Assembly (NCBI RefSeq): GCF_028641065.1
Contig: NC_073400.1
Location: 29,698,001-29,762,000, forward strand
Direction of reading: 5' to 3'
Source: Leucoraja erinacea
Taxonomy: Eukaryota
DNA length: 64,000 bases
Positions within the stretch are counted from its first letter, which is position 1; the number at the start of each line of letters is the position of its first letter. Of this stretch, positions 4,501-63,797 are shown piece by piece. Position numbers and translations under genes: made by a program. Under the pieces are notes generated by a model. That model saw only the letters and a list, made by a program, of their open reading frames with translations. It ran no database searches and was not told where the DNA came from.

Positions 4501-7500
4501 CACGCCCACAGGGAAGGAGGATCTGGGCGCCAGGTAGATTCAGAAGCAGTGTTCAAGAAGGATCTGCAGATGCTGGAAGATAGATATCGCAGTGGAGTAG
4601 ACAAAGTGTTCAAGAAGGAACTCAGTTCTGCTTTCACTGGAACTTGGGGAAAAATCCCGGTGAAATGGGAATTAACACCAGCGGGAAAAGCATTAAAGTG
4701 CAACAGGATCTATGCAAAAGAAGAGACACAAAATGCTGGAGTAACTCAGCGGGACGGGCAGCATCTCTGGAGAGAAGGAAATGGGTGAGGAAACATCACC
4801 TGTCGGTTTCTCCAGAGATGCTGCCTGTCCCGCTGAGTTACTCCAGCTCTTTGTGTCTATCTTTGTGTCAACCAGCACCTGCAGTTCCTTGCTACACATG
4901 ATCTATGCGAAACCATGAACCTGTCTGAACAGCACAAATGACATGTTTTTTATTGTTAAACCTCAGCTTGTGTTGCTGCAGTGTGAGTGATCTTTCATCA
5001 TTAATGTGCCAACAGGGTCAAGCGGAATAACTGAACCCGAGGAGGTGAGGGGAGAGTTGGGGCAGTCGGTCACAGTGGAATGTCAGTATGGTCAGGAATA
5101 CAAGGACAACAGGAAGCTGTGGAGGAAAGGTGATTCTTACCAGAAATCTTATACTGTGGTTTCTACTGATGACCCACAACAACGGAGAACATCGATGACT
5201 GATGACAAAACACACCAGATAGTTTTAGTCACCATCGACAAGCTGGAGAAGAGTGATGAAGGACGCTACTGGTGTGTGATAGTAAAGAGAAACGATTCAC
5301 CCATTGAATTGGTCTCCATCTCATTGAAGGTTTCTGAAGGTAAGTTGACGATCTCTCCTCACTCTCCCAGATGTGAAAATTCCAGCCTGTGAATTCCCGG
5401 CCTCGGTCCTGACGGTGACTCGGTGCCACATCCCCGGGGGTCGCGGTAACGGGGCTGGGTGGATAACTCACTTACTGGGGTCCCGGCCCGTGGGGCCACA
5501 CCAAGAGCTCACTGTCGCTGGAGCAATATGGGGGGGGGGGGGGGGGGGGGGGGGGGCTGTCAGACACCAGCCCCACGGAAGGTCCCATCTACCGGCGGTT
5601 CTGTTGCTGACGGCTCATTTCCACGAAGACGATCGCTCCGGGACCAGAACCTCTGCCGCCCCCTCACTGGGGCAGGTGGTGGGAAACCCGGGTGGAGATA
5701 GGAGTCAATGGGGGAGGGGGCAGGTTAGTAGAAGATACTTAAAATTAGAGAACCAACGTTCAAACCGTTGGGTTGTAAACTACCTGAGCCCAATATGAGG
5801 TGCGGTTCCTCCAATTTGCATGTGGCTTCACTCTGGCAATGGAGGAGGCCCAGGACAGAAAGGTCAGTGTGGGAATGGGAAGGGACATGGACAGGGTTGG
5901 CAACCGGGAGATCAAGAATGGTCTGAACCCGAAAAGGACACCTATCCATTTTCTCCAGAGATTCTGCCTGATCCGCCGAGTTACTCCAGCACTTTGTGTC
6001 TATCTTTGGTTTAAACCAGCACCTGCAGTTCCTCGCTACACATGATCTATGCAAAACCATGAACCTGTCTGAACAGCGCAAATGACATGTTTTTTATTGT
6101 TAAACCTCAGCTTGTGCTGCCGGCGGTTCTGCTGCTGGCGGCTCATTTCCCCAAAGCCGATCGCTCCGGGTCCAGAACCTCTTGCTGCAGTGTGAGTGAT
6201 CTTTCATCATTAATGTGTCCACAGGGTCAAGGGGAATAACTGGACCTAAGGAGGTGAGGGGAGAGTTGGGGCAGTCGGTCACTTTGGAATGTCAGTATGG
6301 TCAGGAATACAGTGACAACAAGAAGCGATGGAGTAAAGGTTATTATTACACAAATTCTTCTACCGTGGTTTCTACTGATGACCCACAATATAGGAGAACA
6401 TCGATGAGTGATAACAAAACACAACGGATAGTTTCAGTCACCATCGACAACCTGAAGAAGAGTGATGAAGGATACTACTGGTGTGTGCTGATTGTAAAGG
6501 GAATATTTCCAATCAATAAAAGGACCTCCATCTTATTGACGGTTTCTGAAGGTACGTTGACGATCTCTCCTCACTCTCCCAGATGTGAACATTCCAGCCT
6601 GGGAATTCCCGGCCTCGGTCCTGACGGTGACTCGGTGCCACATCCCCGTGGGTCGGTGTGAAGGAGGGGGGAGCACATTTACTGGGGTCCCGGCCCATGG
6701 GGCCACACCAAGAGCCCACTGTTCCAGGAGCAGTGTGTGTGTGGGGGGGGGGGGGGGGGGGGGCTCATCAATGGGGACCGGCGGTTCTGCTGCTGGCGGC
6801 TCATTTCCCCAAAGACGATCGCTCCAGGTCCAGAACCTCTGCCGCCCCTCACTGGGGCAGGGGAACAGCCAGAACCTCTGGTGCCCCCTCACCCTCTCCC
6901 CCTGCCCGTCACTGTCACACCCACCACACACACAACATCTGTAGAAAGGTCCCAACACTAAACATTGTCAGTTCATTCCTTCCACAGATGCTGCCTGACC
7001 TGCTGAGTTACTCCAGCACTTTGTGTTTTGCTCAAGATTCCAGCACCTGCAATTCCTTGTGTCTCACAAACTTTGGTGATTCATGAGTTCAGTTTATTGT
7101 TGTTGTCTGTACTGAGGTACAGGGAAAAGCTTTTACCATGTTTCCAATGATGGCCAAATCATTGGGTATTTTTAAGATTCACAGGTTCTCGATTAGTATG
7201 AGTGTCAAGCGATATGGGGAGAAGGGAAGATAATGGGGTTGAGAGGGAGAGATAGATCAGCCATGATTGAATGGCGGAGTAGACATAAATAAGCCAAATG
7301 GCCGCATTCTGCCCCTATCACATGAACTTCATAACAAGACGATTTCAGTACAGTAGTAGAGGGGTTCTTCCGCAGTTGTATCAGGCTCTGGTAAGACCAC
7401 ATCTGGAGTATTGTGTACAGTTTTGGTCTAATTTGAGGAAGAACATCCTTGTGATTGAGGCAGTGCAGCGTAGGTTCACGAGATTGCTCCCTGGGATGGC

Positions 7501-9114
7501 GGGACTGTCATATGAGGAAAGATTGAAAAGACTAGGCTCAAAACTGGAGTTTAGAAGGATGAGTGGGTTTCTTATAGAAACTTATAAAATTATAAAAGGA
7601 CTGGACAAGCTTGATGAAGGAAAAATGTTCCCAATGTTGGGCAAGTCCAGAACCAGGGGCCACAGCCTTAGAATAAAGGGGAGGCCATTTCAGACTGCGG
7701 TGAGAAAAAACTTTTTCACCCAGAGAGTTGTGAATTTGTGGAATTCCGTGCCACAGAAGGCAGTGGAGGCCAAATCACTGGATGGATTTAAGAGAGAGTT
7801 AGATAGAGCTCCAGGGGCTAGTGGAATCAAGGGATATGGGGAGAAGGCAGGCACGGGTTATTGATTGGGGACGTTCAGCCCTGATCACAGTGAATGGCGG
7901 TGCAGGCTCGAAGGGCTGAATGGCCTCGTCTTGCACCTATTTTCTATGTTTCTATAACGTATGAACGAAGAATCCTCATGAGATGACTAGATCAAGGGGC
8001 TTGGTCCATCTATGGGGGCCTCAGAAGGATCCTTGCTCAAATCTCTGGATTGGGATTTGAACCCAGGAATCTCCCAACACGGAGCAAGAGCGCTCCCGAC
8101 TGAGGCATCTCCGACACATCACTAAAGTGGCACAGAACGTGCTTTCAGACTTTTAATGTTCAAAAACGTCATTCACTTTATCTCCACAAGGGTCTCAAAC
8201 AAGCCGCCCAGACATGGTCACCACCACCTCTACAACAATAATCCCAGTGAAATGGGAATTAACACCAGCGGGAAAAGCATTAAAGTGCACCAGGATCTAT
8301 GCAAAAGGAGAGAGACACAAAATGCTGGAGTAACTCAGCAGGAAGGGCAGCATCTCTGGAGAGAAGGAAATGGGTGAGGAAACATCACCCGTCGGTTTCT
8401 CCCGAGATGCTGCCTGTCCCGCTGAGTTACTCCGGCTCTTTGTGTCTATCTTTGGTGTAAACCAGCACCTGCAGTTCCTTGTTACACATGATCTATGCGA
8501 AACCATGAACCTGTCTGAACAGCACAAATGACATGTTTTTTATTGTTAAACCACAGCTTGTGTTGCTGCAGTGTGAGTGATCTTTCATCATTAATGTGCC
8601 CACAGGGTCAAGGGGAATAACTGGACCCGAGGAGGTGAGGGGAGAGGTGGGGCAGTCGGTCACTGTGGAATGTCGGTACGATCGGAAATACAAAGACAAC
8701 GACAAGCTATGGAGTAAAGGTGATTATTACCTGTCATCTCCTACCGTGGTTTCTACTGATCACCCACAACAAGGGAGAACATCGATGACTGATGACAAAA
8801 AACAACGGATAGTTTCAGTCACCATCGACAACCTGGAGAAGAGTGATGAAGGATACTACTGGTGTGTGATAGTAAAGGGAATATTTTCAAGCGATGAAAG
8901 GACCTCCATCTCATTGACGGTTTCTGAAGGTACGTTGACGATCTCTCCTCACTCTCCCAGATGTGAACATTCCAGCCTGGGAATTCCCGGCCTCGGTCCT
9001 GACGGTGACTCGGTGCCACATCCCCGGGGGTCGGGGTGAAGGAGGGGGGAGCACATTTACTGGGGTCCCGGCCCATGGGGCCACACCAAGAGCCCACTGT
9101 CCCAGGAGCAGTGT

Positions 9115-9145
<31 letters not shown>

Positions 9146-12100
9146 GGGGGGGGGGCTCATCAATGGGGACCGGCGGTTCTGCTGCTGGCGGCGCATTTCC
9201 CCAAAGACGATCGCTCCGGGTCCAGAACCCCTGCCGCCCCTCACTGGAGCAGGGGAACAGCCAGAACCTCTGGTGCCCCCTCACCCTCTCCCCCTGCCCA
9301 TCACTGTCACACCCACCACGCACACAACATCTGAAGAAGGGACCCAACCTTAAACATTGTCAGTTCATTCCTTCCACGGATGCTGCCTGACCTGCTGAGT
9401 TACTCCAGCACTTTGTGTTTTGCTCAAGATTCCAGCACCTGCAATTCCTTGTGTCTCACAAACTTTGGTGATTCATGAGCTCAGTTTATTGTTGTGGTCT
9501 GTACTGAGGTACAGGGAAAAGCTTTTACCATGTTTCCAATGAGGGCCAAGTCATTGGGTATTTTCAGGTGGAGATTGACAGGTTCTCCATTAGTACGGGT
9601 GTCAAGCGATATGGGGAGAAGGCAGGAGAATGGGGTTGAGAGGGAGAGATAGATCAGCCATGATTGAAAGGTGGAATAGACTCAATGGGCCAAATGGCCT
9701 CAATCTGCCCCTATCACTTATGAACTAATGAACTAAGAATCCTCAAGAGATGAGTGATATAGACTTTACACTGAGCCACACAAACTGTACAAGATGAGAC
9801 ACTCAACGGGTCGGGCAGCTTCTGTGGAGAGAGAATGAGAGTTAATGTTTCAGGTAAATACCTCCAACCAAATTGCATTATTTCCAATTCAGTCCGCGTG
9901 ATGAAAATAGTCCATGGATCCTCCCGCTCCCAAGTTCTTCTCCATTGTAGAAAAGATGTGCCTAACTCTAGCAGCAGGCAGATAACACAGCCTGTGGGAC
10001 TCTGAAGGGCATGAAAGAAGTCTCTGAATGCTTGTGACCATCTGGTGGCATCTTAATGGGTGAGTCTCCGGTCTAGATCAAGAGGCTTGGTCCATCTATG
10101 GTGGCCTCAGAAGGATCTTTGCTCAAATCTCTGGATTGGGATTTGAACCCAGGAATCTCCCCACACGGAGCAAGAGCGCTCCCGACTGAGGCATCTCCCA
10201 CACATCACTAAAGTGGCACAGAACGTACTTTCAGACATTTAATGTTCAAAAACGTCATTCCCTTTATCTCCACAAGGATCTCAAACAAGCCACCCAGACA
10301 TGGTCAGCACCACCTCTGCAACAATAAGCACAAAGGCTTCCACCACAACCATTCTGACCACCATGCCTCAAGATGCACCAACCACCAAGGCAGCAAGTTC
10401 CACAGAGTCTCCTGGTTCAACACCTACAAACAGGTTAGTAACTCGAAGAGCCAACTCAGCCTCACCTGAGAACCAATTAGTTCAGTTCAATTCAGCTCAG
10501 TTTAAAGATACAGCATGGAAATGGGCCCTTTGGCCCACCGAGTCCGCTCTGAGCAGCGATCACCCCATACACCAGTTCTGTTCTACACACTAGGGGCAAC
10601 TTACTACAAACCCGCACGTCTTTGGAATGTGGGAGGAAACTGGAGAACCCAGAGTAAACTCTTGCGATCACATGGAGAACGTACAGACTCTGCACTGACA
10701 GCACCGGTATCAGGATCGACCCCGCGTCTACTGTGCTGTGAGGCAGCAACTCTACCGCTGAGCTGACATCTCAATGGGCGAGCCTCATGTCTAGATCAAG
10801 GGGCTTGGTCCATCTATGGTGGTTTAGGAAGGATCCTTGCTCAAATCTCAGGTTTCGGATTCGAATCAAAAATCTCCCCACACAGAGCAAGATCGCCCCC
10901 AACTGCAGCATCTCCCACACGTCACTAAAGTGGCACAGAACGTGATTATAAACATTTAATGTTCAAAGACTTCATTCACTTTATCTTCACAAGGGTCTCA
11001 AACATATCACCCAGATATCCTCACCACTTTGGTGTGTGTGTGTGTGTGGGGGGGGGGGGGTTGCACGGTGGCGCAGCGGTAGAGTTGCTGCCTTACAACG
11101 CTTGTAGCGCCAGAGACCCAGGTTCGATCCCGACTACAGGTGCTGCCTGTACGGGGTTTGTACGTTATCCCCACGACCGCATGGGTTTTCTCTGAGATCT
11201 TTGATTTCCTCCAACACTCTAAAGACATACAGGTATGTAAGTAGATTGGCTTGGCGTATGTGTCAATTGACCCTAGTGTGTGTGTAGCCTAGTGTTAGTG
11301 TGCGAGGATCGATGGTCGGTGTGGACTCCATGGGCCGTCGGGCCTGTTTCCGCGCTATATCTCAAAATTAAACTAAACTGGATTAAAATATGGTCACCAC
11401 CACCTCAGGAACCACCACACCCACTCTGCCTCCGGAAGCATCGACCACCAGGAGCTCCTGGTTCATCGCCTCGACACAGGTCAGTGACTCAAAGTCCCAG
11501 TACTTTGAGAAAGCGTGGCTGATCATATTCCAGTCCATTGATAAATACTCCTTGGCCCTGACTAAAGTCCATCTGTCCTTAGTACACCCAGTGGCCCTAC
11601 CATTGTGAATGTCTACCCTTACATGATGCCAAAAACAAATAACGTCACACTTATCATGGTTCAATACCTGCTGGCATTGCTCTGCCCAACATACCAGTTG
11701 CTTCTTATCCCTCTGTGGTCTATGATTATCGTACTATCCAAAATGAGACAATGTTGATGTAATCTGTAAACTCGTAAATCATACTTCCAACATTAACATC
11801 TAAGGCCGGCAGATGGGACTAGTGTAGATAAGGACATCTTGGTCGGCAATGGGGAAATTGGGTCAAAGGACATGTTTTCGTGATCTATGTCTGACCATCA
11901 AAATGAACATCTAAGTTGTTAATGTAGTCATGGAACACCTCCAAGGAATGGGTGCATGTTGCGATATTAACATCTCACCAATGTCCACGCCAAAATCTTG
12001 GATCACACTGAATGATTCCGTGTGCAATATGATGAAAGAAAATTACCAGCGTTGATCTGTGGTAACTCTGTGTGGAAGTAATAATATTTCATTGGATTTC

Positions 12101-13617
12101 CAGGGACATCGTGCTGAATGTTCGCCGTGTTTGGGGTGTGTTACGCTGGGTACTCTTTGGAATTCTGCTTCTCTTCCCGGTTTCCATCAGCTGTGTGACA
12201 ACTTTGAAAAGGTGAAAGTTTGCAATCTCTTTACTCTGATGTTCACATTAAATTCAACTGGAAATGATGGGAATTTACTTTCGATTTGTAGAGATAAAGT
12301 GTGGACATACAGCGCCCTCCATAATGTTTGGGACAAAGACCCTTCATTTATTTATTTGCCTCTGTATTCCACAATTTGAGATTTGTAATTGAAAAAATCA
12401 CACGTGGTTAAAGTGCACATTGTCAGATATTATTAAAGGGTATACAGCCAATCAAGTCCGCGCCGACCAATGATCACCCCGTACACTCGCACTATCCTAC
12501 ACACGAGGGACAATTTACAATTATACAGAGGCCAATTAACCTACAAAACTACACGTCTTTGGATTGTGGTAAGAAACCGGAGCACCTGGATAAAACCCAC
12601 GCTGTCAGAGGCAGAACATACAAACTCCGTACAGACAGCACCCGTAGTCATGATCAAACCCGGGTCTCTGGCGCTGTAAGGCAGCAACTCTACCGCTGCG
12701 CCACTGTGCCGCCCTGGGTCATTTCCTCGGGTAAAATTTGATGGTGGAGATTATAAACTGTGTTTTAATTGTTATTCAAGGAAAAAAACAGCCAAGACCT
12801 TGGAGATGAGGTCGGCAGTGGTGGAGGAAGGAGAGGAACAGCGCCGGTGAGCTGGCTGGGTGAGGCCTCACCTCGCATGGAGACGGCCGTGGGAGGCGAG
12901 GGGAAAAGGGTGCGTTGGTGGGTCGAGGTGTGGGCGGAGTGCGAGTGGGCTGCTGGAGGCCCTGCAGCAGCCGGTGGATCGGGTGCCGCTGGAGGTCCTG
13001 CAGAGGTCGGGGATGAGCGTACGGTTCGGACACGGCCTGCAGCGGCACGGAGCGGTGGTGGAGGCACCGACAACATCGCCAGGCCAGGCCGACCCCTGCA
13101 ACTCCCACCCAGTGCCGTCTCCATGACAATGGGCCTTTAAGCCCAAAATAAAATGGGCCTTTAAGCCCAGTTTGATGTTTAAGAATATAAGATACTGCCA
13201 GTAATGTGGCAACTCTTGTGTACTGCATCATATAATCTGCTATTAATACTCTTGTTCTTAGCTTCAGCTGTGCTTATATCAAGTAAGATTTTTACTGAAT
13301 TCTATACAAAAGAAATGTCACTGTACCCATGTGCATGAGACAATAAAGTATCATTGAACCATTGAACAATGGGGATATAAAAACGGTTAAATGATTACAA
13401 GTATTGAACTGTGGACACGCGTTAGAAGAATAAGATAAAAATGAAGGGTAATCGTTATATCAATATTGTTATTCTGACGGAATGACGCCCAATAATCATC
13501 GTTTAGCTTTTCAGGGCCAGAGAGGGTGTTCACCAGTTGGAGATGTACAAATCTCATCACCTTGACCCTACAGCATCACCACACCACACCTATGTCCAAT
13601 CTACCTTGACCACTTGA
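1406..13617 (+). CDS. Gene A: CD300/pIgR-like (MDIR-like) 3-Ig-V type I receptor, spliced CDS join(1406-1502,5016-5339,6225-6551,8606-8929,10277-10433,12104-12211,13515-13617), 479 aa; or 446 aa if the TM exon reads through to TGA at 12213-12215
   Basis: Exons joined by hand using GT-AG sites with compatible phases (1,1,1,1,2,2). No internal stops. Signal peptide + V domains + mucin stalk + TM architecture. Confidence 0.8.
3040..3610 (+). mobile_element. Rex-Babar-like LINE 3' fragment (unit A copy)
   Basis: LRRLRKAGLPTVHLRSFYRGTIESILTHGITSWFGSC...HSFFPQAIRLVN is typical of the Rex1/Babar RT C-terminus. Confidence 0.75.
4409..4507 (+). promoter_or_regulatory. Candidate intronic myeloid enhancer (copies at 24150-24248 and 60582-60680)
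   Basis: GGGGAAGTG (PU.1-type), CTTCCTG (ETS) abutting GTCACATGAC (MiT/TFE/USF E-box), and GCCACGCCC (KLF/SP) within 100 bp of non-repeat sequence. Confidence 0.45.
4724..4858. repeat. Inverted repeat (about 50-bp arms) of a Penelope-associated repeat upstream of A1; also upstream of A3, B1 and C1
   Basis: AGACACAAAATGCTGGAGTAACTCAGCGGGACGGGCAGCATCTCTGGAGA pairs with TCTCCAGAGATGCTGCCTGTCCCGCTGAGTTACTCCAGC...TGTGTCT. Confidence 0.75.
5016..5339 (+). CDS. Gene A Ig V exon A1
   Basis: Acceptor AACAG|GG and donor GAAG|GTAAGT, 324 nt. Motifs GQSVTVEC-Y, KLW, VTIDKLEKSDEGRYWC of a CD300/pIgR-type V-set domain. Confidence 0.93.
5725..6040 (-). mobile_element. Penelope-like element remnant (copies at about 25462, 61895 and 63039)
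   Basis: Minus-strand translation HCQSEATCKLEEPHLILGSGSLQPNGLNV resembles the C-terminus of the Penelope GIY-YIG endonuclease. Confidence 0.65.
6225..6551 (+). CDS. Gene A Ig V exon A2
   Basis: CACAG|GG ... GAAG|GTACGT, 327 nt, open frame, DEGYYWC motif. Confidence 0.92.
7330..7955 (+). mobile_element. 5'-truncated CR1 LINE
   Basis: LYQALVRPHLEYCVQFWS...NFFTQRVVNLWNS peptide and (TTTCTATG)n tail. Confidence 0.88.
8191..8241 (+). pseudogene. Truncated copy of the mucin-stalk exon fused to an intron-1-like sequence (duplication breakpoint)
   Basis: Same acceptor and 5' sequence as 10277 (GSQTSRPDMVTTTSTT). Then switches at AATAA|TCCCAGTGAAATGGG to sequence matching about 4655 onward. Confidence 0.8.
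8606..8929 (+). CDS. Gene A Ig V exon A3
   Basis: CACAG|GG ... GAAG|GTACGT, 324 nt, open frame, V-set motifs. Confidence 0.92.
10277..10433 (+). CDS. Gene A Ser/Thr-rich mucin-like stalk exon (GSQTSHPDMVSTTSATISTKASTTTILTTMPQDAPTTKAASSTESPGSTPTN)
   Basis: Acceptor CTCCACAAG|GA (phase 1) and donor ACAG|GTTAGT (phase 2). S/T/P-rich translation. Confidence 0.85.
10490..10762 (-). mobile_element. tRNA-derived SINE (copy at about 27655-27935)
   Basis: Reverse complement of the same SINE family. Confidence 0.75.
10994..11479 (+). pseudogene. Second stalk exon copy, disrupted by a SINE (gene A)
   Basis: Homologous acceptor and 5' end, then (GT)n/G-run + SINE, then resumes MVTTTSGTTTPTLPPEAST. Donor CAG|GTCAGT is out of frame relative to the first copy. 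Confidence 0.7.
11063..11388 (+). mobile_element. tRNA-derived SINE inside the second stalk exon (copy at about 28236-28558)
   Basis: GCACGGTGGCGCAGCGGTAGAG...GGTTCGATCCC and TAAAC tail. Confidence 0.85.
12104..12215 (+). CDS. Gene A transmembrane exon RDIVLNVRRVWGVLRWVLFGILLLFPVSISCVTTLKR(*)
   Basis: Acceptor TTTCCAG|G, phase 2, matching the stalk donor. Hydrophobic helix containing Arg. Ends either at donor AG|GTGAAA (12211) or at in-frame TGA (12213-12215). Confidence 0.85.
12310..12440 (+). mobile_element. Tc1/mariner TIR remnant (copy at 29488-29618)
   Basis: TA|CAG(C/T)GCCCTCCATAATGTTTGGGACAAAGAC, a Tc1-type terminus after TA. Confidence 0.6.
12445..12712 (-). mobile_element. tRNA-derived SINE (copy at about 29623-29890)
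   Basis: Ends CTACCGCTGCGCCACTGTGCCGCC, the reverse complement of the SINE head. Confidence 0.78.
13515..13617 (+). CDS. Gene A putative terminal cytoplasmic exon (R)AREGVHQLEMYKSHHLDPTASPHHTYVQSTLTT*
   Basis: Acceptor TTTAGCTTTTCAG|G, phase 2, compatible with the TM donor. Non-repeat sequence conserved in unit B. AATAAA downstream at 14011. Confidence 0.5.
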
Positions 13618-14010
13618 GGAGGAATTTCTTTAGCCAGAGGGTGATGAATCTGTGGAATTCATTGCCACAGGCGGCTGTGGAGGTCAAGTCAATGGATATT
13701 TTTAAATTGGAGATTGACAGGTTTACTCAGGGTGTCAAAGGTTGAGGGGAGAAGGCAGGAGAATGGGATGGAGGGGGAAAGATAGATCATCCATGATTGA
13801 ATGGCGGAGTAGACTCGATGGAGCAAATGGCCGAATTCTGTACCTATGTTTGCAGACACGTCTGTACATCCTGACATTCACCCAAAAGACAGCAGAACAT
13901 AGACTAGAACTCAAAGCTGGCTTTCCAGAATGTGAACTTTTAACTTTACTACCAATTGAATTGCTGTGTGAAACCCTGCACATTGAATAATGATTAAAAT
14001 AATCCAATGT

Positions 14011-14016
14011 AATAAA
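14011..14016 (+). terminator. Candidate polyadenylation signal, gene A (alternative AATAAA at 13342)
   Basis: AATAAA about 400 nt after the putative stop. Conserved at 31189 in unit B. Confidence 0.35.
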
Positions 14017-18000: not shown

Positions 18001-18074
18001 AGTTCCACAGATTCATCACCCTCTGACTAAAGGTTTATTGAGCAATTCTTTGAGCAAACTGCCCACCTGCACTA

Positions 18075-20076: not shown

Positions 20077-20173
20077 ATGGCGGTGGGACAGGGAGAATTC
20101 ACCCACCAGAGACGGCCCAGATCCAGGGGAACAGTCGCTCTGTTGGTTCTTGTCGCTGTTGGTCTCACACCAG
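20077..20173 (+). CDS. Gene B leader exon MAVGQGEFTHQRRPRSRGTVALLVLVAVGLTP
   Basis: Near-identical to 1406-1502. Donor CAG|GTAAAT. Confidence 0.85.
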
Positions 20174-23100: not shown

Positions 23101-26100
23101 CAATTTTTAGTTTCTTCTGTGTATGTAAGTTAAAATGACATTAAAGTAAATACTGAATACTGAATACCCAGGGCCGGCCTTAAGCCGGTTGGACCGTTTG
23201 CTCCCAATTGGGCCCCGCGAGTAAGGGGGCCCCGCGCCAGTGTAATCTACTCTCGACGGGTAGATCTACCCCGGGTGGAGAGAGAGTAGAGGGGTGGAGG
23301 GGGAAGAAAGGGGTAGACGGGGAGGGGGGTGTGAGGGGGAATGGAGAAGGGGGAGAGGGGGAGGTGGGTCGTTCGCTCACGGCAGCGCTCCTGCCCCTCC
23401 AGTCGCCGTGCTTCACGCACACAGACCCGGTTCCACGCCTCTCTCTCCCCGGGGAGAGGCAGTGAACAATACACGGAGGGCTGGGCCGGGGGTTGGGGCA
23501 TCGTATACAAACATTGGCCTCAACTCACACCTGTCTGCCTGTACCCCGGCATCCCTCTCCCTCCCTTCTCTCCTTCCCTCCCTCCTTCCGCTCTTTTCCT
23601 TTCTCTCATTCGCTCCATCCCGTCTTTCTCGACTTCCCTCCCTCCCTCCCACACACACACACACATGATGCACAGACAACTAACACACACAACTAAGTTA
23701 AGATGGGGTAGAAAGCTTTTCACCCAGAGTTGTGAATCTGTAGAATTCTCTGCCACAGAGGGCAGTGGAGGCCAATTCACTGGATGTATTCAAGAGAGAG
23801 TTAGATTTAGCTCTTAGGGCCAATGGAATCATGGGATCACGGGAGCAAGCAGAACTGGGCAGTGCCGGCTCGAAGGGCCGAATCGTCTCCTCCTGCGCCT
23901 ATTTTCTATGTTTATATGTTTCTATGAATCGTCACCTATCCACTTTCTCCAGAGATAGTTCCTGTCCAGTTTAAGGTTGTGACCTCAATAACGGGTAGGC
24001 CATTGAGGACTCAGATGAAGAAATATCTTTTCACCCAGAGAGTTCCTCTTTCTCCAGAGATAGTTCCTGTCCCATTGTGTTACTCCGGCACTTTGTGTCC
24101 TTTTGTACATTAACCAGCATCTGCAGTTCCTTGTTTCTACTAGTTCAATGGGGAAGTGGGTTGTAGTGAGATTGAACACAGGGTGGGTCAGAGTGAGTGA
24201 CAGGTTGGCTTCCTGTCACATGACCACCACTCAGGTCAAGCCACGCCCACAGGGAAGGAGGATCTGGGCGCCAGGTAGATTCAGAAGCAGTGTTCAAGAA
24301 GGAACTGCAGATGCTGGAAGATAGATATCGCAGTGGAGTAGACAAAGTGTTCAAGAAGGAACTCAGTTCTGCTTTCACTGGAACTTGGGGAACAATCCCG
24401 GTGAAATGGGAATTAACACCAGCGGGAAAAGCATGAAAGTGCAACAGGATCTATGCAAAAGAAGAGAGACACAAAATGCTGGAGTAACTCAGCGGGACGG
24501 GCAGCATCTCTGGAGAGAAGGAAATGGGTGAGGAATCATCACCCGTCGGTTTCTCCAGAGATGCTGCCTGTCCCGCTGAGTTACTCCAGCTCTTTGTGTC
24601 TATCTTTGGTGTAAACCAGCACCTGCAGTTCCTTGCTACACATGATCTATGCGAAACCATGAACCTGTCTGAACAGCACAAATGACATGTTTTTTATTGT
24701 TAAATCTCAGCTTGTGTTGCTGCAGTGTGAGTGATCTTTCATCATTAATGTGCCAACAGGGTCAAGGGGAATAACTGAACCCGAGGAGGTGAGGGGAGAG
24801 TTGGGGCAGTCGGTCACTGTGGAATGTCCGTATGATCGGAAATACAAAGACAAGGACAAGCTATGGAGTAAAGGTGATTCTTACCAGAAATCTTCTACCG
24901 TGGTTTCTACTGATCACCCACGACAAGGGAGAACATCGATGACTGATGACAAAACACAACGGATAGTTTCAGTCACCATCGACAACCTGGAGAAGAGTGA
25001 TGAAGGACTCTACTGGTGTGTGATAGTAAAGAGAAACGATTCACTCATTGAATCGACCTCCATCTCATTGACGGTTTCTGAAGGTAAGTTGACGATCTCT
25101 CCTCACTCTCCCAGATGTGAAAATTCCAGCCTGTGAATTCCCGGCCTCGGTCCTGACGGTGACTCGGTGCCACATCCCCGGGGGTCGCGGTAAGGGGGTT
25201 GGGTGGATAACTCACTTACTGGGGTCCCGGCCCGTGGGGCCACACCAAGAGCTCACTGTCGCTGGAGCAGTGTGTGGGGGGGGGGGGGGGGGGCTGTCAG
25301 ACACCAGCCCCACGGAAGGTCCCATCTACCGGCGGTTCTGTTGCTGACGGCTCATTTCCACGAAGACGATCGCTCCGGGACCAGAACCTCTGCCGCCCCC
25401 TCACTGGGGCAGGTGGTGGGAAACCCGGGTGGAGATAGGAGTCAATGGGGGAGGGGGCAGGTTAGTAGAAGATACTTAAAATTAGAGAACCAACGTTCAA
25501 ACCGTTGGGTTGTAAACTACCTGAGCCCAATATGAGGTGCGGTTTCTCCAATTTGCATGTGGCCTCACTCTGGCAATGGAGGAGGCCCAGGACAGAAAGG
25601 TCAGTGTGGGAATGGGAAGGGACATGGACAGGGTTGGCAACCGGGAGATCAAGAAGGGTCCCGACCCGAAAAGGACACCTATCCATTTTCTCCAGAGATG
25701 CTGCCCGTCCCGCTGAGTTACTCCAGTTCTTTGTGTCTATCTTTGGTGTAAACCAGCACCTGCAGTTCCTTGCTACACATGATCTATGCAAAACCATGAA
25801 CCTGTCTGAACAGCACAAATGACATGTTTTTTTATTGTTAAACCTCAGCTTGTGTTGCTGCAGTGTGAGTGATCTTTCATCATTAATTTGCCCACAGGGT
25901 CAAGCGGAATAACTGGACCCAAGGAGGTGAGTAGAGAGGTGGGGCAGTCGGTCACTGTGGAATGTCGGTATGGTCAGGAATACACTGACAACAAGAAGCT
26001 ATGGAAGAAAGGTTATTTTTACACACTATCTTCTACCGTGGTTTCTACTGATGACCCACAACAAGAGAGAACATCGATGAGTGATAACAAAACACAACAG

Positions 26101-35030: not shown

Positions 35031-35032
35031 TT

Positions 35033-47900: not shown

Positions 47901-50900
47901 GGTTGGGGGCTGGGGTGTGTGTGGGTGGGGTGGTGTTTGGTGATTGGGATTGTGAAGTGTGGGGGTGTGTTGGGGGTGTTTGCAGGAGAGCAGTTGTTGG
48001 GTGGTGGGTTTGGGTTGTGGGGGGGGGGGCTGGTTGTGAGGATGTGGGGGTGTGCTGGGGTTGGGTGTGGGTGATTGGTTGGGGGGGTGGGGGGGGGGGT
48101 GTGCGTGTGTCGTTGTTGTTGAGATTTGAGGGTTTGTGGGTGGTTTTGTGGTGTTGGTGTTTTGGTGTGGGGGGTGGAGCTTGGTTGGGTGGTGGGGGGG
48201 GGGGGGTGGGATTGGGGGGGGTGGGGGTATGGGGGGGGTGGTGTGGGGTGGGGGTGGGTGGGGGTGTGGGTAGTTGTGTGGGTTGTTTTGTGTGGTTTTG
48301 GTGGGCTGTTGGTTGGTTGTGTGGTGATGGGGGGGGGGGAGGTCTTGTGGGTTTGGTGACATAATGGGGGGTTGTGGGGTTGTATGTTGGGGGGGGGGGG
48401 ATTTGGTGGGGGGTGTGTGTGTGTCGTTGTTGGGGGGGTGGGTGTGTTGGGTGGGTTGGGTGAGGGGTTATGGGGGGGTGTGGGTGTGTAGGGTGGTGTT
48501 GGTTTGCTTGTGTTTGGGGGGGAAGCTTTTTTTGTTTGTTGGGGTGGGGTCGATTTGTGGGTTTTGTGGGGGTGGGGGGGGTGCTGTGGTTTTGGGGGTG
48601 GGTGTGTTGCTTGGGCTGTGGGTTGTGGGTGGGTTTTTGGTGTGTTTGCTTGTGGGGTGATGTGTTTTGTGGGGGGCTGGATTTGGTGGTGTGTGGTGTG
48701 TGGGCTTGTGGGTGGTGTTGGGTTGGGTTTTCTGGGGGGGTGTGTGTGGGGTGTGTGGTGGGGGGGGGTTTGGTTGTGGATTTTGGGGTGCTGTGGGTGT
48801 GATGGGGGGGTCGGGATTTGTGGCGTGGGGGTGTGGGGGGGGGGGATTTTGGTGTGGGGTGTGTTGGGGTGTTGTGTCTCTGGGGTTTGGGTGTGGGGGG
48901 TGTGGGTGGTGTCTGAGGGTGTGGGTGGTGTTGGGGTTGTTGTGTGGTGGGTGGGGGGGGGGGTGGGCTTGTTGTTGGGATGTGGGTGTGGGTGTGGGTT
49001 GGGTTGTGGCTTGTGGGTTGTGTGTGTTTGGTGTTCGGGAGGGTGTGGGGGGGGGTTGTGGGGGGGGGGGGGTGTGTTTTGGGTTGGGGGGGTGGGGGTG
49101 TTGGGGGGGGGGGGAGTGTGGGGTTGGGGGGTTTGGGGGGGGGGGGGGGTGTGTTGGGTTGTTTGTGGTTTTTGTTATTTGGGTGGTTGGTGGGTTGTGT
49201 GGTGGGGTGGATTTCGGGGGTGGTATGGGGTTTGGGGTTGGATTTGTGGTTGGGTTGACACGGTGGGGGGTTTGTGGGGGGGGGTTGGGGGTGGGGGTGG
49301 GTTTGTGGGGGTGGTGCTTGTGGGTTGGCGTGGGGTGTGTGCTGGGCGGGTGGGTTGACGGTGTGTTTCCTGGGGGGTGTGGGGGGTTTTTGTGTTGTTG
49401 GGGGGGATTTTTTGCTGGGTTTGGGGTGATGTGTGGGTGTGTTGGGGGGTTGGTGATGGGGGGTGGGTGATGGGGGGTGGGGGGGTGGATTTTGTGGTGT
49501 TGGGGGGGGTTGGTGTTTGTGGTTGGGGGGGGTTGTGTGGTGGGGTGTGGGGGGGTTGGGGGGGGATGTTTGGGGGGGTGTGGGGTGGTGTGTGGGGGGG
49601 CTTGTTGCTGGGATGGTGGGGGGGTGGGGTTGGGGGGTGTTGGGCTTTGTGGCTTTGGGGGGGGGGTGTGGTTTGTTGGGATGGGGGGATTTGGGGGGAT
49701 TGGTGTGGGGGGGGGGGTTGGGGGGGGGGTGGGGGTGATTGCTTGGTGTGGTGGGGGGGGTTTGGGGGGGGGGATGTGGTGTGTGGTTGTGGATGTTGGG
49801 TTGGTGTTGTGGGGGGTTGGGGTGGGGGGGGGGGGGTTGTGTTGGTTGGGTGGGGGGGGGGGGTTTGGTTGGGTTGGTGTGCTTTGAGGTGGGATGATTT
49901 TGTGTGTCGGGCTGGTGGGGTGGTGGTGGGTTGGCTGGGGGGGGGGGGTTCGTAGTGGGGGGTTGGATTGGGGGGGGTTTGGGTAGTTGGGGGGGTTGTG
50001 TTGGGGTGTGGTGTTGGGGGGGTTGCGATTGGGGTGGGGGGGTGGGGGGGTGTGGGGGGGGGTGGTGGGGGGTGTGTGGGGGGGGGTGTGTGTGGGGGTG
50101 GGGGGGGGGGTGGTGGATTGGTGGTGGGGGGGGGGGGGGTGGCCAGTGGGTGGTGGGGGTGTGGGTGTGGTGTGGTGCCTTGGTGTTGGGCGTGGCTGTG
50201 GTGTTGTGGGCGGGATTGGGAGGGGGTGTGGTTCGTTGTGTGTGGTGTGTGGNNNNNNNNNNNNNNNNNNNNNNNNNNNNNNNNNNNNNNNNNNNNNNNN
50301 NNNNNNNNNNNNNNNNNNNNNNNNNNNNNNNNNNNNNNNNNNNNNNNNNNNNNNNNNNNNNNNNNNNNNNNNNNNNNNNNNNNNNNNNNNNNNNNNNNNN
50401 NNNNNNNNNNNNNNNNNNNNNNNNNNNNNNNNNNNNNNNNNNNNNNNNNNNNNNNNNNNNNNNNNNNNNNNNNNNNNNNNNNNNNNNNNNNNNNNNNNNN
50501 NNNNNNNNNNNNNNNNNNNNNNNNNNNNNNNNNNNNNNNNNNNNNNNNNNNNNNNNNNNNNNNNNNNNNNNNNNNNNNNNNNNNNNNNNNNNNNNNNNNN
50601 NNNNNNNNNNNNNNNNNNNNNNNNNNNNNNNNNNNNNNNNNNNNNNNNNNNNNNNNNNNNNNNNNNNNNNNNNNNNNNNNNNNNNNNNNNNNNNNNNNNN
50701 NNNNNNNNNNNNNNNNNGTTGTGGTGTTTTGTGTGTGTTGTGTGTGTGTGGTGTGGTGTGGGTGTTGGTTTGTGGTGTGTGTGTGTGTGTGGTGGTGTGT
50801 GTGGTGTTTGTGTGTTTTGTGTGGTCTGTTGGGGTGTTGTGTGTGTGTGTGGTTGTGGGTGTGTGGTGTGGTGGTGGTGTGTGTGTGTGTTGTGTGTGTG

Positions 50901-52853
50901 TTTGTGGTGGTGTGTGTTTGGTGTGGGTGTGTGTGTGGTTTGGGTTTGGGTTGTGTGTGTGTTGTGTGGTGTGTGGGGTTGTGATGTGTGTGTGTGGTGT
51001 GTTGTGTGTGCTGTGTTGTGTGTTGGGTGTGTTGTGTGTGTGTGGTGTGTGTGTGTTGTGTTTGGTGTTTGTGTGTGTGGTGTGTGGTGTGTGGTGTGTG
51101 TTGTGGTGTGTGGGTGTGTGTTTGGTGGTGTGATGGTGGGGCTGTGTATGTGTTGTGTGTGTGTTTGTGGGGTGTGTGTGNNNNNNNNNNNNNNNNNNNN
51201 NNNNNNNNNNNNNNNNNNNNNNNNNNNNNNNNNNNNNNNNNNNNNNNNNNNNNNNNNNNNNNNNNNNNNNNNNNNNNNNNNNNNNNNNNNNNNNNNNNNN
51301 NNNNNNNNNNNNNNNNNNNNNNNNNNNNNNNNNNNNNNNNNNNNNNNNNNNNNNNNNNNNNNNNNNNNNNNNNNNNNNNNNNNNNNNNNNNNNNNNNNNN
51401 NNNNNNNNNNNNNNNNNNNNNNNNNNNNNTGTGTGTGGTGTTTTTGTGTGCTTGTGTGTGGTGGGTGTGTGTGTTGTTGGGTGGGTGTGTTGTGTGTGTG
51501 TGTGTGTGCTTGTGTGTTTGTTGTGTGCGTGTGTTGTGTGGTNNNNNNNNNNNNNNNNNNNNNNNNNNNNNNNNNNNNNNNNNNNNNNNNNNNNNNNNNN
51601 NNNNNNNNNNNNNNNNNNNNNNNNNNNNNNNNNNNNNNNNNNNNNNNNNNNNNNNNNNNNNNNNNNNNNNNNNNNNNNNNNNNNNNNNNNNNNNNNNNNN
51701 NNNNNNNNNNNNNNNNNGTGGGTGTTGTGTGTTGTTGTGTGTGTTGTGGGTGTGTTGTTGGGCTGGGGTGTTGCTGTGTGTGTTGGTTGTGTTTTGTGTG
51801 TGTGTGTGTTGTTTGTGGTTGGGTTGTGGTGTGGGTGGTGTGGTGTTTTGTTGTGTTTGTGTGTGTTGTTTTGTGTTGTGGTGTGTGTGTTGTGTTGTGT
51901 TGTGTGGTGTTTTGTTTGGGTTGTGGTGGTGGTGTGGTGTTTGTGGTGGGTGTTGTTGGGGGTTGGTGTGGCTTGGTGTGTTGTGGTGTGTTGTTTTGGT
52001 TTTTTGCTTGTAGTGGTGTGTGGGTTGGGTTTGTGTTGTTGTGTTGCTTGTGTGTGGTGTGTGTGTGGTGTGGTGTGTGTGTTGGTGCTGTTTGGGGGGT
52101 GTTTTTTCTGTTGGTGTTTGTGTTTGTGTGTGGGTGTGTTGTGGTGTTTGCTGTGGTGTGTGTGTGTGTTGGGTGTTTTTGTGTGTTGGGGCTGGGGTTG
52201 CTGGTGTGTGGTGTGTGGGTTTGGGTGTGTGTGGGGGTTGTGGTTGGGGTGTGGTGTTTGTTTCACTTGGGTGTGTGGTGTGGGTGTTGGGTTTGGGGGT
52301 GTGGGGTGGTCTATGTGGGTGTGTGTTGTGTGGTCTTTGGTTGTGGGTGGTGTTGTGGTTTTGGTGTGGGGGGGTTGGTTGTGGGTGTGTGGTGTTGGTG
52401 TTGTGTGGGTGTGGGTGTCTGGGTTGTGTGTGTGGGTGTGTTGGGGGTGGCGTGGTGTGTGGGTGTGTGTGTGGGGTGTGGTGGGTGGGTGCTGGTGTTG
52501 TTGTGTGTGGTGAGTGACTTGGTGTGTAAATTGGTATTGGTGTGTGTGGTGTGGGTTTGTGTGGTTCGTGGTGTGTGTGTGGGTGGTGTGGGGTGGTGGG
52601 CGTTTGGTTTGTTTTGTGCTNNNNNNNNNNNNNNNNNNNNNNNNNNNNNNNNNNNNNNNNNNNNNNNNNNNNNNNNNNNNNNNNNNNNNNNNNNNNNNNN
52701 NNNNNNNNNNNNNNNNNNNNNNNNNNNNNNNNNNNNNNNNNNNNNNNNNNNNNNNNNNNNNNNNNNNNNNNNNNNNNNNNNNNNNNNNNNNNNNNNNNNN
52801 NNNNNNNNNNNNNNNNNNNNNNNNNTGGTGAGGTGTGTGGTGTGTGGTGGCGT
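35939..52853. other. Assembly gap or low-quality fill: N runs interleaved with aperiodic G/T-only sequence
   Basis: Almost no A or C on the + strand, no stable period, dozens of N blocks. It splits a single SINE. Confidence 0.85.
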
Positions 52854-55786: not shown

Positions 55787-55883
55787 ATGGCGGTGGGACA
55801 GGGAGAATTCACCCTCCAGAGACGGCCCAGATCCAGGGGAACAGTCGCTCTGTTGGTTCTTGTCGCTGTTGGTCTCACACCAG
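55787..55883 (+). CDS. Gene C leader exon MAVGQGEFTLQRRPRSRGTVALLVLVAVGLTP (gene C runs off the window end)
   Basis: Paralogue of the A and B leaders with the same donor. Confidence 0.85.
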
Positions 55884-61191: not shown

Positions 61192-61515
61192 GGTCAAGGG
61201 GAATAACTGAACCCGAGGAGGTGAGGGGAGAGTTGGGGCAGTCGGTCACTGTGGAATGTCAGTATGGTCGGAAATACAAAGACAACGACAAGCTATGGAG
61301 TAAAGGTGATTATTTCTTTCCATCTTCTACCGTGGTTTCTACTGATGACCCACAACGAGGGAGAACATCGATGACTGATTTCAAAGAACAACGGATAGTT
61401 TCAGTCACCATCGACAAGCTGGAGAAGAGTGATGAAGGACTCTACTGGTGTGTGATTGTAAAGGGAAACGATTCACCCATTGTATCGGCCTCCATCTCAT
61501 TGACGGTTTCTGAAG
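61192..61515 (+). CDS. Gene C Ig V exon C1
   Basis: CACAG|GG ... GAAG|GTAAGT, 324 nt, open frame. Confidence 0.93.
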
Positions 61516-62329: not shown

Positions 62330-62653
62330 GGTCAAGGGGAATAACTGGACCCGAGGAGGTGAGGGGACAGTTGGGGCAGTCGGTCACTGTGGAATGTCAG
62401 TATGGTCAGGAATACACTGACAACAAGAAGCTGTGGAGTAAAGGTGATTCTTACCGGAATTCTTATACTGTGTTTTCTACTGATGACCAACGACGAGGGA
62501 GAACATCGATGACTGATGACAAAGAACAACAGATAGTTTTAGTCACCATCGACAAGCTGAAGAAGAGTGATGAAGGACTCTACTGGTGTGTGATAGTAAA
62601 GGGAAACGATTCACTCATTGAATCGACCTCCATCTCATTGACGGTTTCTGAAG
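62330..62653 (+). CDS. Gene C Ig V exon C2
   Basis: CACAG|GG ... GAAG|GTAAGT, 324 nt, open frame. Confidence 0.92.
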
Positions 62654-63473
62654 GTAAGTTGACGATCTCTCCTCACTCTCCCAGATGTGAAAATTCCAGC
62701 CTGTGAATTCCCGGCCTCGGTCCTGATGGTGACTCGGTGCCACATCCCCGGGGGGGGGGGTCGCGGTAAGGGGGTTGGGTGGATAACTCACTTACTGGGG
62801 TCCCGGCCCGTGGGGCCACACCAAGAGCTCACTGTCGCTGGAGCAGTATGGGGGGGGGGGGGGGGGGGGACTGTCAGACACCAGCCCCACGGAAGGTCCC
62901 ATCTACCGGCGGTTCTGTTGCTGACGGCTCATTTCCACGAAGACGATCGCTCCGGGACCAGAACCTCTGCCGCCCCCTCACTGGGGCAGGTGGTGGGAAA
63001 CCCGGGTGGAGATAGGAGTCAATGGGGGAGGGGGCAGGTTAGTAGAAGATACTTAAAATTAGAGAACCAACGTTCAAACCGTTGGGTTGGAAACTACCTG
63101 AGCCCAATATGAGGTGCGGTTCCTCCAATTTGCATGTGGCCTCACTCTGGCAATGGAGGATGCCCAGGACAGAAAGGTCAGTGTGGGAATGGGAAGGGAC
63201 ATGGACAGGGTTGGCAACCGGGAGATCAAGAATGGTCCCGACCCGAAAAAGACACCTATCCATTTTCTCCAGAGATTCTGCCTGATCCGCCGGGTTACTC
63301 CAGCACTTTGTGTCTATCTTTGGTGTAAACCAGCACCTGCAGTTCCTTGCTACACATGATCTATGCGAAACCATGAACCTGTCTGAACAGCGCAAATGAC
63401 ATGTTTTTTATTGTTAAACCTCAGCTTGTGTTGCTGCAGTGTGAGTGATCGTTCATCATTAATGTGTCCACAG

Positions 63474-63797
63474 GGTCAAGGGGAATAACTGGACCCAAGG
63501 AGGTGAGGGGAGAGTTGGGGCAGTCGGTCACTGTGGAATGTCGGTATGGTCAGGAATACACTGACAACAAGAAGCTATGGAGTAAAGGTTATTATTACAC
63601 ACTATCTGATACCGTGGTTTCTACTGATGACTCACAACAAGGGAGAACATCGATGACTGATAACGAAACAAAACGGATAGTTTCAGTCACCATCGGCAAC
63701 CTGAAGAAGAGTGATGAAGGATACTACTGGTGTGTGATTGGAAAGGGAATATTTTCAAGCAATGAAAAGACCTCCATCTCATTGACGGTTTCTGAAG
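63474..63797 (+). CDS. Gene C Ig V exon C3
   Basis: CACAG|GG ... GAAG|GTACGT, 324 nt, open frame. Confidence 0.92.

What the first reader, a model, noticed from the sequence alone, without database searches (positions are those of the whole stretch)
5016..63797. Three hypervariable loops occur in shuffled combinations across the eight V exons
Frameworks and flanking introns are near-identical, but three loops come in discrete alleles that assort independently. BC loop: YGQEY (A1, A2, B2, C2, C3), YDRKY (A3, B1), hybrid YGRKY (C1). CC' loop: GDSY(Q/R) (A1, B1, C2), GY(Y/F)YT (A2, B2, C3), GDY(Y/F) (A3, C1). FG loop: (R/G)NDS(P/L)I (A1, B1, C1, C2), GIF (A2, A3, C3), DVRWNF (B2). These partitions do not fit a single tree (for example A1/C2 versus B1 versus A3/C1). 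This implies segmental gene conversion or unequal crossover plus diversifying selection on a ligand-binding surface, giving a germline CDR-like repertoire.
Basis: partly seen in the sequence, partly recalled or inferred. Interest (0 to 1): 0.8.

Follow-up and report, generated by a model that had tools for sequence, protein, structure and literature searches.

The report
Mosaic V exons in skate receptors
Three neighbouring little-skate immune-receptor genes of the CD300/pIgR type carry eight antibody-like V exons whose binding loops were reshuffled by gene conversion and unequal crossover and kept different by selection, which is a clear but expected example of how paired innate receptor families evolve.

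Summary
The window is little skate (Leucoraja erinacea). It has three tandem paralogous CD300/pIgR-like genes: A (3 V exons, charged transmembrane segment), B (2 V exons) and C (3 V exons, ITIM tail).

All eight exons are intact, phase 1-1, and carry the stated loop motifs. No exon lies near an N gap.

- **Divergence:** exons differ by 11.8% on average, against 3-4% in adjacent intron and about 2.6% over 3.6 kb of intron between genes.
- **Recombination:** PHI p = 0.001, and p = 0.01 after collapsing linked sites. Segment trees reject each other (AU 1e-3 to 1e-87). The two flanking introns alone give conflicting trees (AU 2e-30 and 3e-58).
- **Selection:** dN exceeds dS in all 28 pairs. Omega is 3.1 (p = 1.4e-5).

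Three qualifications apply.
- 35 of 55 variable positions lie outside the three loops. The strongest omega is in codons 39-73. BC and FG also have high dS, so they look like old cassettes.
- Five of the eight loop combinations already exist in Amblyraja radiata. Only A1, C1 and C2 are new mosaics, and a few events explain them.
- Eight domains sit in tandem in three proteins, so "repertoire" is generous.

This is a new member of a known kind, of moderate interest.

The parts
1406..1502 (+). Gene A leader exon (phase 1 donor)
   Evidence: tblastn with P0002. The translation and GT donor were read.
5016..5339 (+). V exon A1. Mostly V1-type, with a V2-type patch over the BC loop.
6225..6551 (+). 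V exon A2. Its loop combination matches the Amblyraja P0175 domain.
8190..8240 (+). Remnant of the 5' end of a stalk exon, lying between A2 and A3. It marks gene A as a fusion of two genes.
   Evidence: tblastn gives 17/17 residues identical to the start of the gene C stalk. 7987-8241 is 95% identical to 10073-10327.
8606..8929 (+). V exon A3. Its 5' flank is V1-type and its 3' flank V2-type. Its loop combination matches the Amblyraja P0176 domain.
10277..10433 (+). Gene A stalk exon (approximate ends)
12104..12215 (+). Gene A transmembrane exon with an arginine in the membrane span (approximate ends)
   Evidence: P0002 sequence
12761..12850 (+). Gene A short cytoplasmic exon with the stop codon (approximate start)
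20077..20173 (+). Gene B leader exon
24760..25083 (+). V exon B1. V1-type, with the same loop combination as Amblyraja P0157 domain 1.
25898..26218 (+). V exon B2. V2-type, with the same loop combination as Amblyraja P0157 domain 2.
27465..30028 (+). Gene B stalk, transmembrane (arginine) and cytoplasmic exons, all with open frames
35939..52825 (.). G/T-only low-complexity stretch with 26 N runs, lying between genes. It is not part of any exon.
55787..55883 (+). Gene C leader exon
61192..61515 (+). V exon C1. Mosaic: P0176-like BC, V1-type FG.
62330..62653 (+). V exon C2. It is a hybrid. The far upstream flank (about 210-220 nt before the exon) and the BC block are V2-type, and everything 3' of them is V1-type. 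The few sites between those two 5' blocks are mostly V1-like. This is the expected product of one unequal crossover.
   Evidence: (runs test p = 5e-5)
63474..63797 (+). V exon C3. Its loop combination matches Amblyraja P0175/P0176. Gene C continues beyond the window into an ITIM tail.

Best explanation
The window holds three tandem paralogues of a CD300/pIgR-like (CMRF35-like) paired receptor family of the little skate. Genes A and B are activating-type, with an arginine in the membrane span and a short tail. Gene C is inhibitory-type, with an ITIM-like tail.

Their ectodomains are built from V exons that are phase 1-1 and sit in roughly 1.14-kb repeat units. Each unit is flanked by a shared element of about 170 nt. 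Because the units are so alike, they misalign and recombine.

- **Unequal crossover inside an exon.** This made the hybrid C2 and turned a two-domain gene into the three-domain gene C.
- **Short gene-conversion tract.** This put a V2-type BC loop into the otherwise V1-type A1.
- **Gene fusion.** An illegitimate join between two genes, marked by a stalk-exon remnant, brought A3 into gene A.

Repeated conversion keeps introns and much of the framework alike. Selection for different binding surfaces keeps or adds amino-acid differences in the BC, CC', C'C''-D, DE and FG regions.

Several loop cassettes are older than the Leucoraja-Amblyraja split.

Shown here: the exon anatomy, the recombination signal, dN > dS and the shared loop types across species. 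Inferred: the order of events, that the loops bind ligand, and that all exons are spliced in tandem.
For: Identity:
- P0002 (XP_055510911.1, L. erinacea) is leader + A1 + A2 + A3 + stalk + transmembrane segment.
- P0155 is C1-C3 plus an ITIM-like tail.
- The segmental duplication A~B~C is about 95% identical.
- The fold matches mouse CD300lf at TM 0.89. The best PDB sequence hits are pIgR and CLM-1.

Exon more divergent than intron:
- 11.8% against 3.1% and 3.8% between units.
- V1 exons differ by 7.1-10.8%, against 2.5-2.7% over about 3.6 kb of intron. Fisher p = 3e-5 to 2e-10.

Recombination:
- PHI p = 0.001, NSS p = 0.004, Rmin = 13. PHI p = 0.01 after collapsing linked sites and p = 0.0002 for the whole unit.
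- AICc falls from 3616 to 3441 with three breakpoints. Log-likelihood gains 57 units over a single topology with free branch lengths. AU tests reject the other segments' trees.
- With introns only, the upstream flank groups A2, B2, C2, C3 (97% bootstrap). The downstream flank groups A2, A3, B2, C3 (100%). Each data set rejects the other tree at AU 2e-30 and 3e-58.
- Painting against B1/B2 shows blocks. Runs-test p: A1 0.0045, C2 5e-5, A3 0.0013, A2 0.003, C3 0.002.

Selection:
- dN/dS exceeds 1 in 28 of 28 pairs. Bootstrap p = 0.0008.
- GY94 omega is 3.1 (p = 1.4e-5). With separate trees per segment, p = 1.2e-4.

Old cassettes:
- Loop pS is 0.18 against 0.044 elsewhere.
- Amblyraja domains carry the same BC, CC' and FG types and five of the eight combinations.

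Reads: contigs from two studies cover all three A exons at 97% likeness or better. Only one difference was seen.
Against: - A GENECONV-style longest-fragment test did not survive correction. The best result was Bonferroni p = 0.095.
- Breakpoints were chosen from the same data, so the AU p-values are too optimistic. The intron-only test uses a split fixed in advance at the exon ends.
- Omega for the BC and FG segments is not significantly above 1.
- With only eight sequences, site-level inference is weak.
Concerted evolution of the introns is therefore inferred from protein comparisons only.
- No RNA was seen on the exons, so tandem splicing rests on RefSeq models.
- The contigs are 70-150 nt long and cannot link the BC and FG loops of one exon.
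Confidence: 0.8

Rival explanations
1. The mosaics are assembly artefacts. Near-identical 1.14-kb units and two haplotypes were stitched together wrongly, creating false loop combinations.
For: - The units are 96-99% alike in their flanks.
- The same contig holds a badly resolved stretch with 26 gaps.
- Poly-G and GT tracts sit in the introns.
- Only short contigs were available as a check.
Against: - Contigs from two studies cover all three gene A exons at 97% or better, with a single difference.
- One 121-nt contig spans both the BC and CC' loops of A2 with no mismatch.
- Five of eight combinations recur in an independently assembled Amblyraja genome.
- The hybrids fit simple crossover products together with their introns.
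Confidence: 0.05
2. There was no recombination. The same loop residues arose repeatedly by point mutation under similar selection in different exons.
For: Positive selection is present. Selection can produce homoplasy that mimics recombination at coding sites.
Against: - Shared blocks involve several adjacent nucleotides, including synonymous ones.
- Compatible sites cluster along the sequence (PHI).
- Non-coding flanks alone give strongly conflicting trees.
Confidence: 0.03
3. The copies are young and drifting under relaxed constraint, so the exon differences are neutral decay.
For: - The duplications are recent, with introns 2.5-2.7% apart.
- No protein for gene B alone was found in the searches.
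Against: - Omega = 1 is rejected (p = 1.4e-5).
- Exon divergence is 3-4 times intron divergence.
- All eight frames, both cysteines, the tryptophan and all splice sites are intact.
Confidence: 0.03
4. The exons serve as alternative or combinatorial cassettes rather than fixed tandem domains, so the mosaics form an expressed choice of binding domains. The mechanism would be alternative or cross-gene splicing, or somatic conversion.
For: - All exons are phase 1-1 with near-identical splice sites.
- RefSeq isoform X1 (P0177) joins the gene B leader and B1 to C1-C3.
Against: - RefSeq models string the exons in tandem.
- There is no RNA evidence either way here.
- No RSS flanks the exons.
- Tandem domains are the rule in pIgR-type proteins.
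Confidence: 0.08

Closest known systems
Mammalian CD300 (CMRF35-like) receptors, e.g. mouse CD300lf/CLM-1
   Same: - It is the closest solved fold, at TM 0.89 and 38% identity.
- It has paired activating forms (charged membrane residue) and inhibitory forms (ITIM).
- Ligands bind between the CC' and FG loops, with BC nearby (PMC6166816). These are the loops that vary here.
   Different: - CD300 proteins have one V domain. These have two to four in tandem.
- The second (C-C') disulfide that floors the CD300lf ligand cleft is absent from all eight skate domains.
Polymeric immunoglobulin receptor (pIgR)
   Same: The best PDB sequence hits are pIgR D5/D4 and fish pIgR. Both have tandem V domains of this type. 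NCBI names these proteins 'pIgR-like'.
   Different: The tails are a short charged-membrane tail or an ITIM tail, not a long sorting and transcytosis tail. A 2014 survey found no pIgR in shark genomes (PMC4016189). No evidence of Ig binding is available.
[quoted passage not shown]
   Same: MDIRs are described as a multigene family of activating and inhibitory receptors in a skate, related to CD300, TREM and pIgR (PMC3031540). From my own memory of Cannon et al. 2006 (not held in the library), they have one to six domains in varied arrangements.
   Different: Membership could not be tested. No MDIR sequence was at hand, and no protein of that name appeared in two homologue searches.
Paired receptor families shaped by unequal crossover, conversion and positive selection (primate KIR/LILR, teleost NITR/DICP)
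   Same: From general knowledge, they share the same evolutionary mode. Tandem clusters show domain gain and loss by unequal crossover, activating forms derive from inhibitory ones, and binding surfaces evolve fast.
   Different: The domain type and lineage differ. Here the recombining units are single exons within and between genes, with breakpoints inside the exon.

Membership tests
CD300 / CMRF35-like | V-set Ig domain with the canonical B-F disulfide and a CD300-like fold | tested here: met
   Pfam V-set, E = 1e-11 to 1e-13. C22, W35 and C86 are invariant. Foldseek best hit is CD300lf at TM 0.89.
CD300 / CMRF35-like | Second disulfide joining the C and C' strands (the CX7C pair) | tested here: not met
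   All eight domains have W-S/R/K-K-G and no cysteine in the CC' region. Homologues from Narcine, Hemitrygon and Mobula keep both cysteines.
CD300 / CMRF35-like | A single extracellular V domain | tested here: not met
   Gene A has three V exons, gene B two and gene C three in the window. RefSeq models have three or four domains.
CD300 / CMRF35-like | Paired signalling: a charged membrane residue with a short tail, or ITIM motifs | tested here: met
   Genes A and B have an arginine in the membrane span. The gene C tail has V-I-Y-T-T-V and V-V-Y-A-T-I. The motifs were read by eye. No signalling was tested.
pIgR | Several tandem pIgR-type V domains | tested here: met
pIgR | Long cytoplasmic tail with sorting and transcytosis signals, and binding of polymeric Ig | tested here: not met
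   The tails are about 30 residues with a charged membrane span, or are ITIM-type. Ig binding cannot be tested with these tools.
MDIR (skate) | Sequence relationship to the published MDIR1-5 of Raja eglanteria | not testable with these tools
   The original paper is not held. No MDIR-named protein appeared.
Rearranging antigen-receptor V genes | A recombination signal sequence at the 3' end of the V exon | tested here: not met
   Every exon ends in a GT splice donor. The only RSS-like matches are weak and lie inside the coding sequence of A3, B1 and C1.

The most novel reading that the evidence does not exclude
The symmetric V exons may be used as alternative or combinatorial cassettes. This could be by exon skipping, by splicing across genes (as in RefSeq isoform X1, which joins the gene B leader and B1 to C1-C3), or by somatic conversion between units in leukocytes. 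The loop mosaics would then feed an expressed, germline-encoded choice of binding domains in a cartilaginous fish.
Probability: 0.08. Interest if true: 0.75.

Novelty: new member of a known kind. Interest (0 to 1): 0.35.

Why it matters
Cartilaginous fish are the oldest living lineage with antibody-type immunity, and their innate paired receptors are poorly described. This locus shows, at nucleotide resolution, the same evolutionary mode known from KIR, LILR and CD300 in mammals.
- Exon-sized units recombine within and between genes.
- Domain number changes through unequal crossover.
- An activating gene was assembled by fusion with part of a gene whose stalk remnant matches the stalk of the inhibitory gene C.
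- Selection keeps the binding loops apart while conversion erases differences around them.

It also gives a concrete set of loop variants to test for ligand specificity. The variants sit on a CD300-like fold that has lost the disulfide under the ligand cleft. None of this overturns current views.

Tried and rejected
- **Longest-fragment test.** The GENECONV-style pairwise test was not significant after correction, so I did not lean on it.
- **Codon-model script.** The first run failed on output parsing. It was repeated.
- **Outgroup DNA.** The exon-versus-intron comparison across species could not be made, and only proteins were compared.
- **MDIR literature.** The original paper and a review are not held. 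One broad paper search was wasted on skateboarding papers.
- **RNA evidence.** The two RNA-like runs laid had no contigs on the exons, and one of them is probably DNA. Expression and splicing remain untested.
- I recomputed the strings from files instead.
- **Spliced models.** Whole proteins came from RefSeq entries returned by the tools.
- **RSS scan.** It found only weak matches inside coding sequence, which I treat as chance.
- **Structure mapping.** Variable sites were mapped on secondary structure only, not on a 3-D surface.


Full report
**What is there.** The window contains three tandem paralogous genes.
- A protein search with exon A3 returned XP_055510911.1 (P0002, 'polymeric immunoglobulin receptor-like', Leucoraja erinacea). 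This protein is leader + A1 + A2 + A3 + stalk + transmembrane segment + short tail. The window is therefore little skate.
- tblastn with P0002 places gene A at 1406-12850, gene B at 20077-30028 and the start of gene C at 55787.
- The three regions are about 95% identical segmental copies.
- Gene C is P0155. Its tail carries ITIM-like motifs. Genes A and B have an arginine in the membrane span and a short tail. This is a paired activating/inhibitory cluster.

**Gaps.** All N runs lie at 35939-45091 and 50253-52825, in a G/T-only low-complexity stretch between genes B and C. No V exon or adjacent intron touches one. I filled in nothing.

**The observation.**
- Eight V exons lie at the coordinates listed under 'parts'. 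Each has AG/GT splice sites, is phase 1-1 and has an open frame. All are Pfam V-set.
- An AlphaFold model of A3 (pLDDT 94.5) places the three variable stretches in the BC, CC' and FG loops.
- Variation is enriched there: 20 of 24 positions against 35 of 84 elsewhere (p = 0.0004).
- Even so, most variable positions lie elsewhere, notably residues 53-56, 63-66, 83 and 97-100.

**Exon against intron.**
- Mean pairwise difference is 11.8% in the exon, 3.1% in the 155 nt upstream and 3.8% in the 104 nt downstream.
- Between the positional homologues A1, B1 and C1 the exon differs by 7.1-10.8%. About 3.6 kb of intron differs by 2.5-2.7% (Fisher p = 3e-5 to 2e-10).
- Further downstream there are two intron types. 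A1, B1, C1 and C2 share one. A2, A3, B2 and C3 share the other. The types differ by 13-17%.

**Recombination.**
- Of 46 informative exon sites, 44% of pairs are incompatible. PHI p = 0.001, NSS p = 0.004 and Rmin = 13.
- PHI stays at p = 0.01 after collapsing neighbouring sites with the same pattern. It is p = 0.0002 for the whole unit.
- A GARD-like search with IQ-TREE lowers AICc from 3616 to 3441 with three breakpoints. Separate topologies gain 57 log-likelihood units over one topology with free branch lengths. Each segment rejects the other segments' trees at AU 1e-3 to 1e-87. These p-values are optimistic because the breakpoints were fitted to the same data.
- The cleanest test uses no coding sites. 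The upstream intron groups A2, B2, C2 and C3 (97% bootstrap). The downstream intron groups A2, A3, B2 and C3 (100%). Each rejects the other tree at AU 2e-30 and 3e-58. C2 and A3 therefore change partners across their exons, and selection on loops cannot explain that.
- A longest-shared-fragment test was weak, with a best corrected p of 0.095.

**What the events were.**
- *Reference types.* Gene B has the same two loop combinations as the two-domain Amblyraja protein P0157. I therefore painted the other six units by whether they match B1 or B2. The matches form blocks. Runs-test p: A1 0.0045, C2 5e-5, A3 0.0013, A2 0.003, C3 0.002.
- *C2.* Its far upstream flank and its BC block are V2-type, and everything 3' of the BC block is V1-type. 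A few sites near the exon start are mostly V1-like. This is close to the middle exon expected when a V2 unit misaligns with a V1 unit and a single crossover falls inside the exon. It also explains why gene C has three domains.
- *A1.* It is V1-type on both sides of a V2-type patch of about 25-40 nt over the BC loop. That is a short conversion tract.
- *A3.* A 50-nt remnant of a stalk exon lies just upstream at 8190-8240. It is identical in protein to the start of the gene C stalk. The stretch 7987-8241 copies 10073-10327 at 95% identity. Gene A is thus a fusion. Its 5' part is a two-domain gene whose stalk remnant matches the gene C stalk. Its 3' part is a single-domain activating gene. The A3 loop combination and tail match the single-domain Amblyraja protein P0176.

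**Age of the loop types.**
- Against four Amblyraja domains, A2 and C3 follow P0175/P0176, A3 follows P0176, and B1 and B2 follow the two domains of P0157.
- A1, C1 and C2 take their BC, CC' and FG regions from different types. Five of eight combinations are therefore old, and three are new mosaics.
- The two BC types (G-Q-E-Y against x-x-K-Y) also occur in Rhinoraja. Its frameworks are otherwise homogenised within that species.
- Synonymous difference is 0.18 in the three loops against 0.044 elsewhere. This fits old cassettes kept while conversion smooths the rest.

**Selection.**
- dN/dS exceeds 1 in all 28 pairs.
- Across the exon pN is 0.133 against pS 0.070 (bootstrap p = 0.0008). In the three loops it is 0.273 against 0.179 (p = 0.04). 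Elsewhere it is 0.092 against 0.044 (p = 0.01).
- A GY94 model gives omega 3.1 (LRT p = 1.4e-5).
- With separate trees per segment, omega is 1.7 for codons 1-38 (not significant), 14.1 for codons 39-73 (p = 3e-5) and 1.7 for codons 74-108 (not significant). The combined p is 1.2e-4.
- Neutral decay is rejected. The signal is not confined to the three loops.

**Function by homology.**
- The closest solved fold is mouse CD300lf (TM 0.89).
- In CD300lf, a phosphocholine head group and the norovirus capsid both bind the cleft between the CC' and CDR3 (FG) loops, above a C-C' disulfide. A CDR1 swap halves binding (PMC6166816).
- The skate domains vary in those loops and lack that disulfide. That these loops bind ligand in the skate is inference.

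**Independent checks.**
- Contigs from two studies cover all three gene A exons at 97% likeness or better.
- The one difference is 8684 G>A, an arginine-to-glutamine change in the A3 BC loop.
- One 121-nt contig links the BC and CC' loops of A2.
- The two RNA-like runs showed nothing on the exons.
- The contigs are too short to link BC with FG, so long reads are still needed.
- No RSS flanks any exon.

**Comparison with known families.**
- The genes work like CD300-type paired receptors with pIgR-like tandem domains.
- They fail two CD300 criteria (single domain, second disulfide) and the pIgR tail criterion, so I do not file them as members of either.
- They may belong to the skate MDIR family (PMC3031540), but I could not test that.
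- From general knowledge, the evolutionary mode is the one known for KIR, LILR and NITR.

**Verdict.** 'Independent assortment' and 'repertoire' are overstated. This is a new member of a known kind, with interest 0.35.

I did not test that. It keeps the cassette-choice reading open at low probability.

Noticed in passing
window 8190-8240 (with 7987-8241): The 5' end of a stalk exon, with its acceptor, sits between A2 and A3. It is identical in protein to the start of the gene C stalk, then breaks off. 7987-8241 copies 10073-10327 at 95% identity. This marks gene A as a fusion of two genes.
   Followed up: partly
window 20077-25083 joined to 61192 onward: RefSeq isoform X1 (P0177, 622 aa) joins the gene B leader and B1 directly to C1-C2-C3 and the inhibitory tail. 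It skips B2, the rest of gene B and the gap-filled stretch. Gene B has its own open stalk, transmembrane and tail exons, yet no separate gene B protein turned up.
   Followed up: partly
window 35939-52825: About 17 kb consist almost entirely of G and T, as imperfect TG and G-rich repeats, broken by 26 N runs. It may be a real microsatellite block or poorly resolved sequence.
   Followed up: no
window 4700-4853, 5778-6085, 6856-7933, 8242-8549: These intron stretches have contig depths of 1e5 to 1e6 in all four runs laid. They are high-copy interspersed repeats. The 2.4-kb spacing between A2 and A3 is largely such an insertion.
   Followed up: no
window 8684: One run shows G>A in part of its depth. 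This changes arginine to glutamine in the A3 BC loop, towards the residue of the other BC type. It may be an allele or a paralogue.
   Followed up: no
window about 6140-6205 (upstream of A2): A 65-nt insertion unique to the A2 unit repeats a piece of the inter-exon intron. It looks like a footprint of the junction between repeat units.
   Followed up: no
about 200 nt downstream of each V exon, e.g. window 5540-5570, 6750-6775, 9100-9165: Poly-G and GT tracts of variable length lie in every unit's downstream intron. The reads tool also reported reads cut at three of these places.
   Followed up: no
window 8661, 24815, 61247: A weak RSS-like match (heptamer with one mismatch, 22-nt spacer, nonamer with two mismatches) lies inside the coding sequence of A3, B1 and C1, from the B strand into the BC loop. 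It is probably chance.
   Followed up: partly
about 100 to 35 nt upstream of every V exon, e.g. window 4940-4982: A conserved short open frame starts with ATG and ends at a GT-A-A/G-G-T-like donor 33 nt before the V acceptor. It does not resemble the real leader at 1406-1502.
   Followed up: no
proteins P0157, P0175, P0176, P0153, P0154: All skate (Rajiformes) domains seen lack the C-C' cysteine pair that other batoids keep. The one exception is the Amblyraja P0176 domain, which keeps one cysteine. Rhinoraja domains are strongly homogenised within the species.
   Followed up: partly
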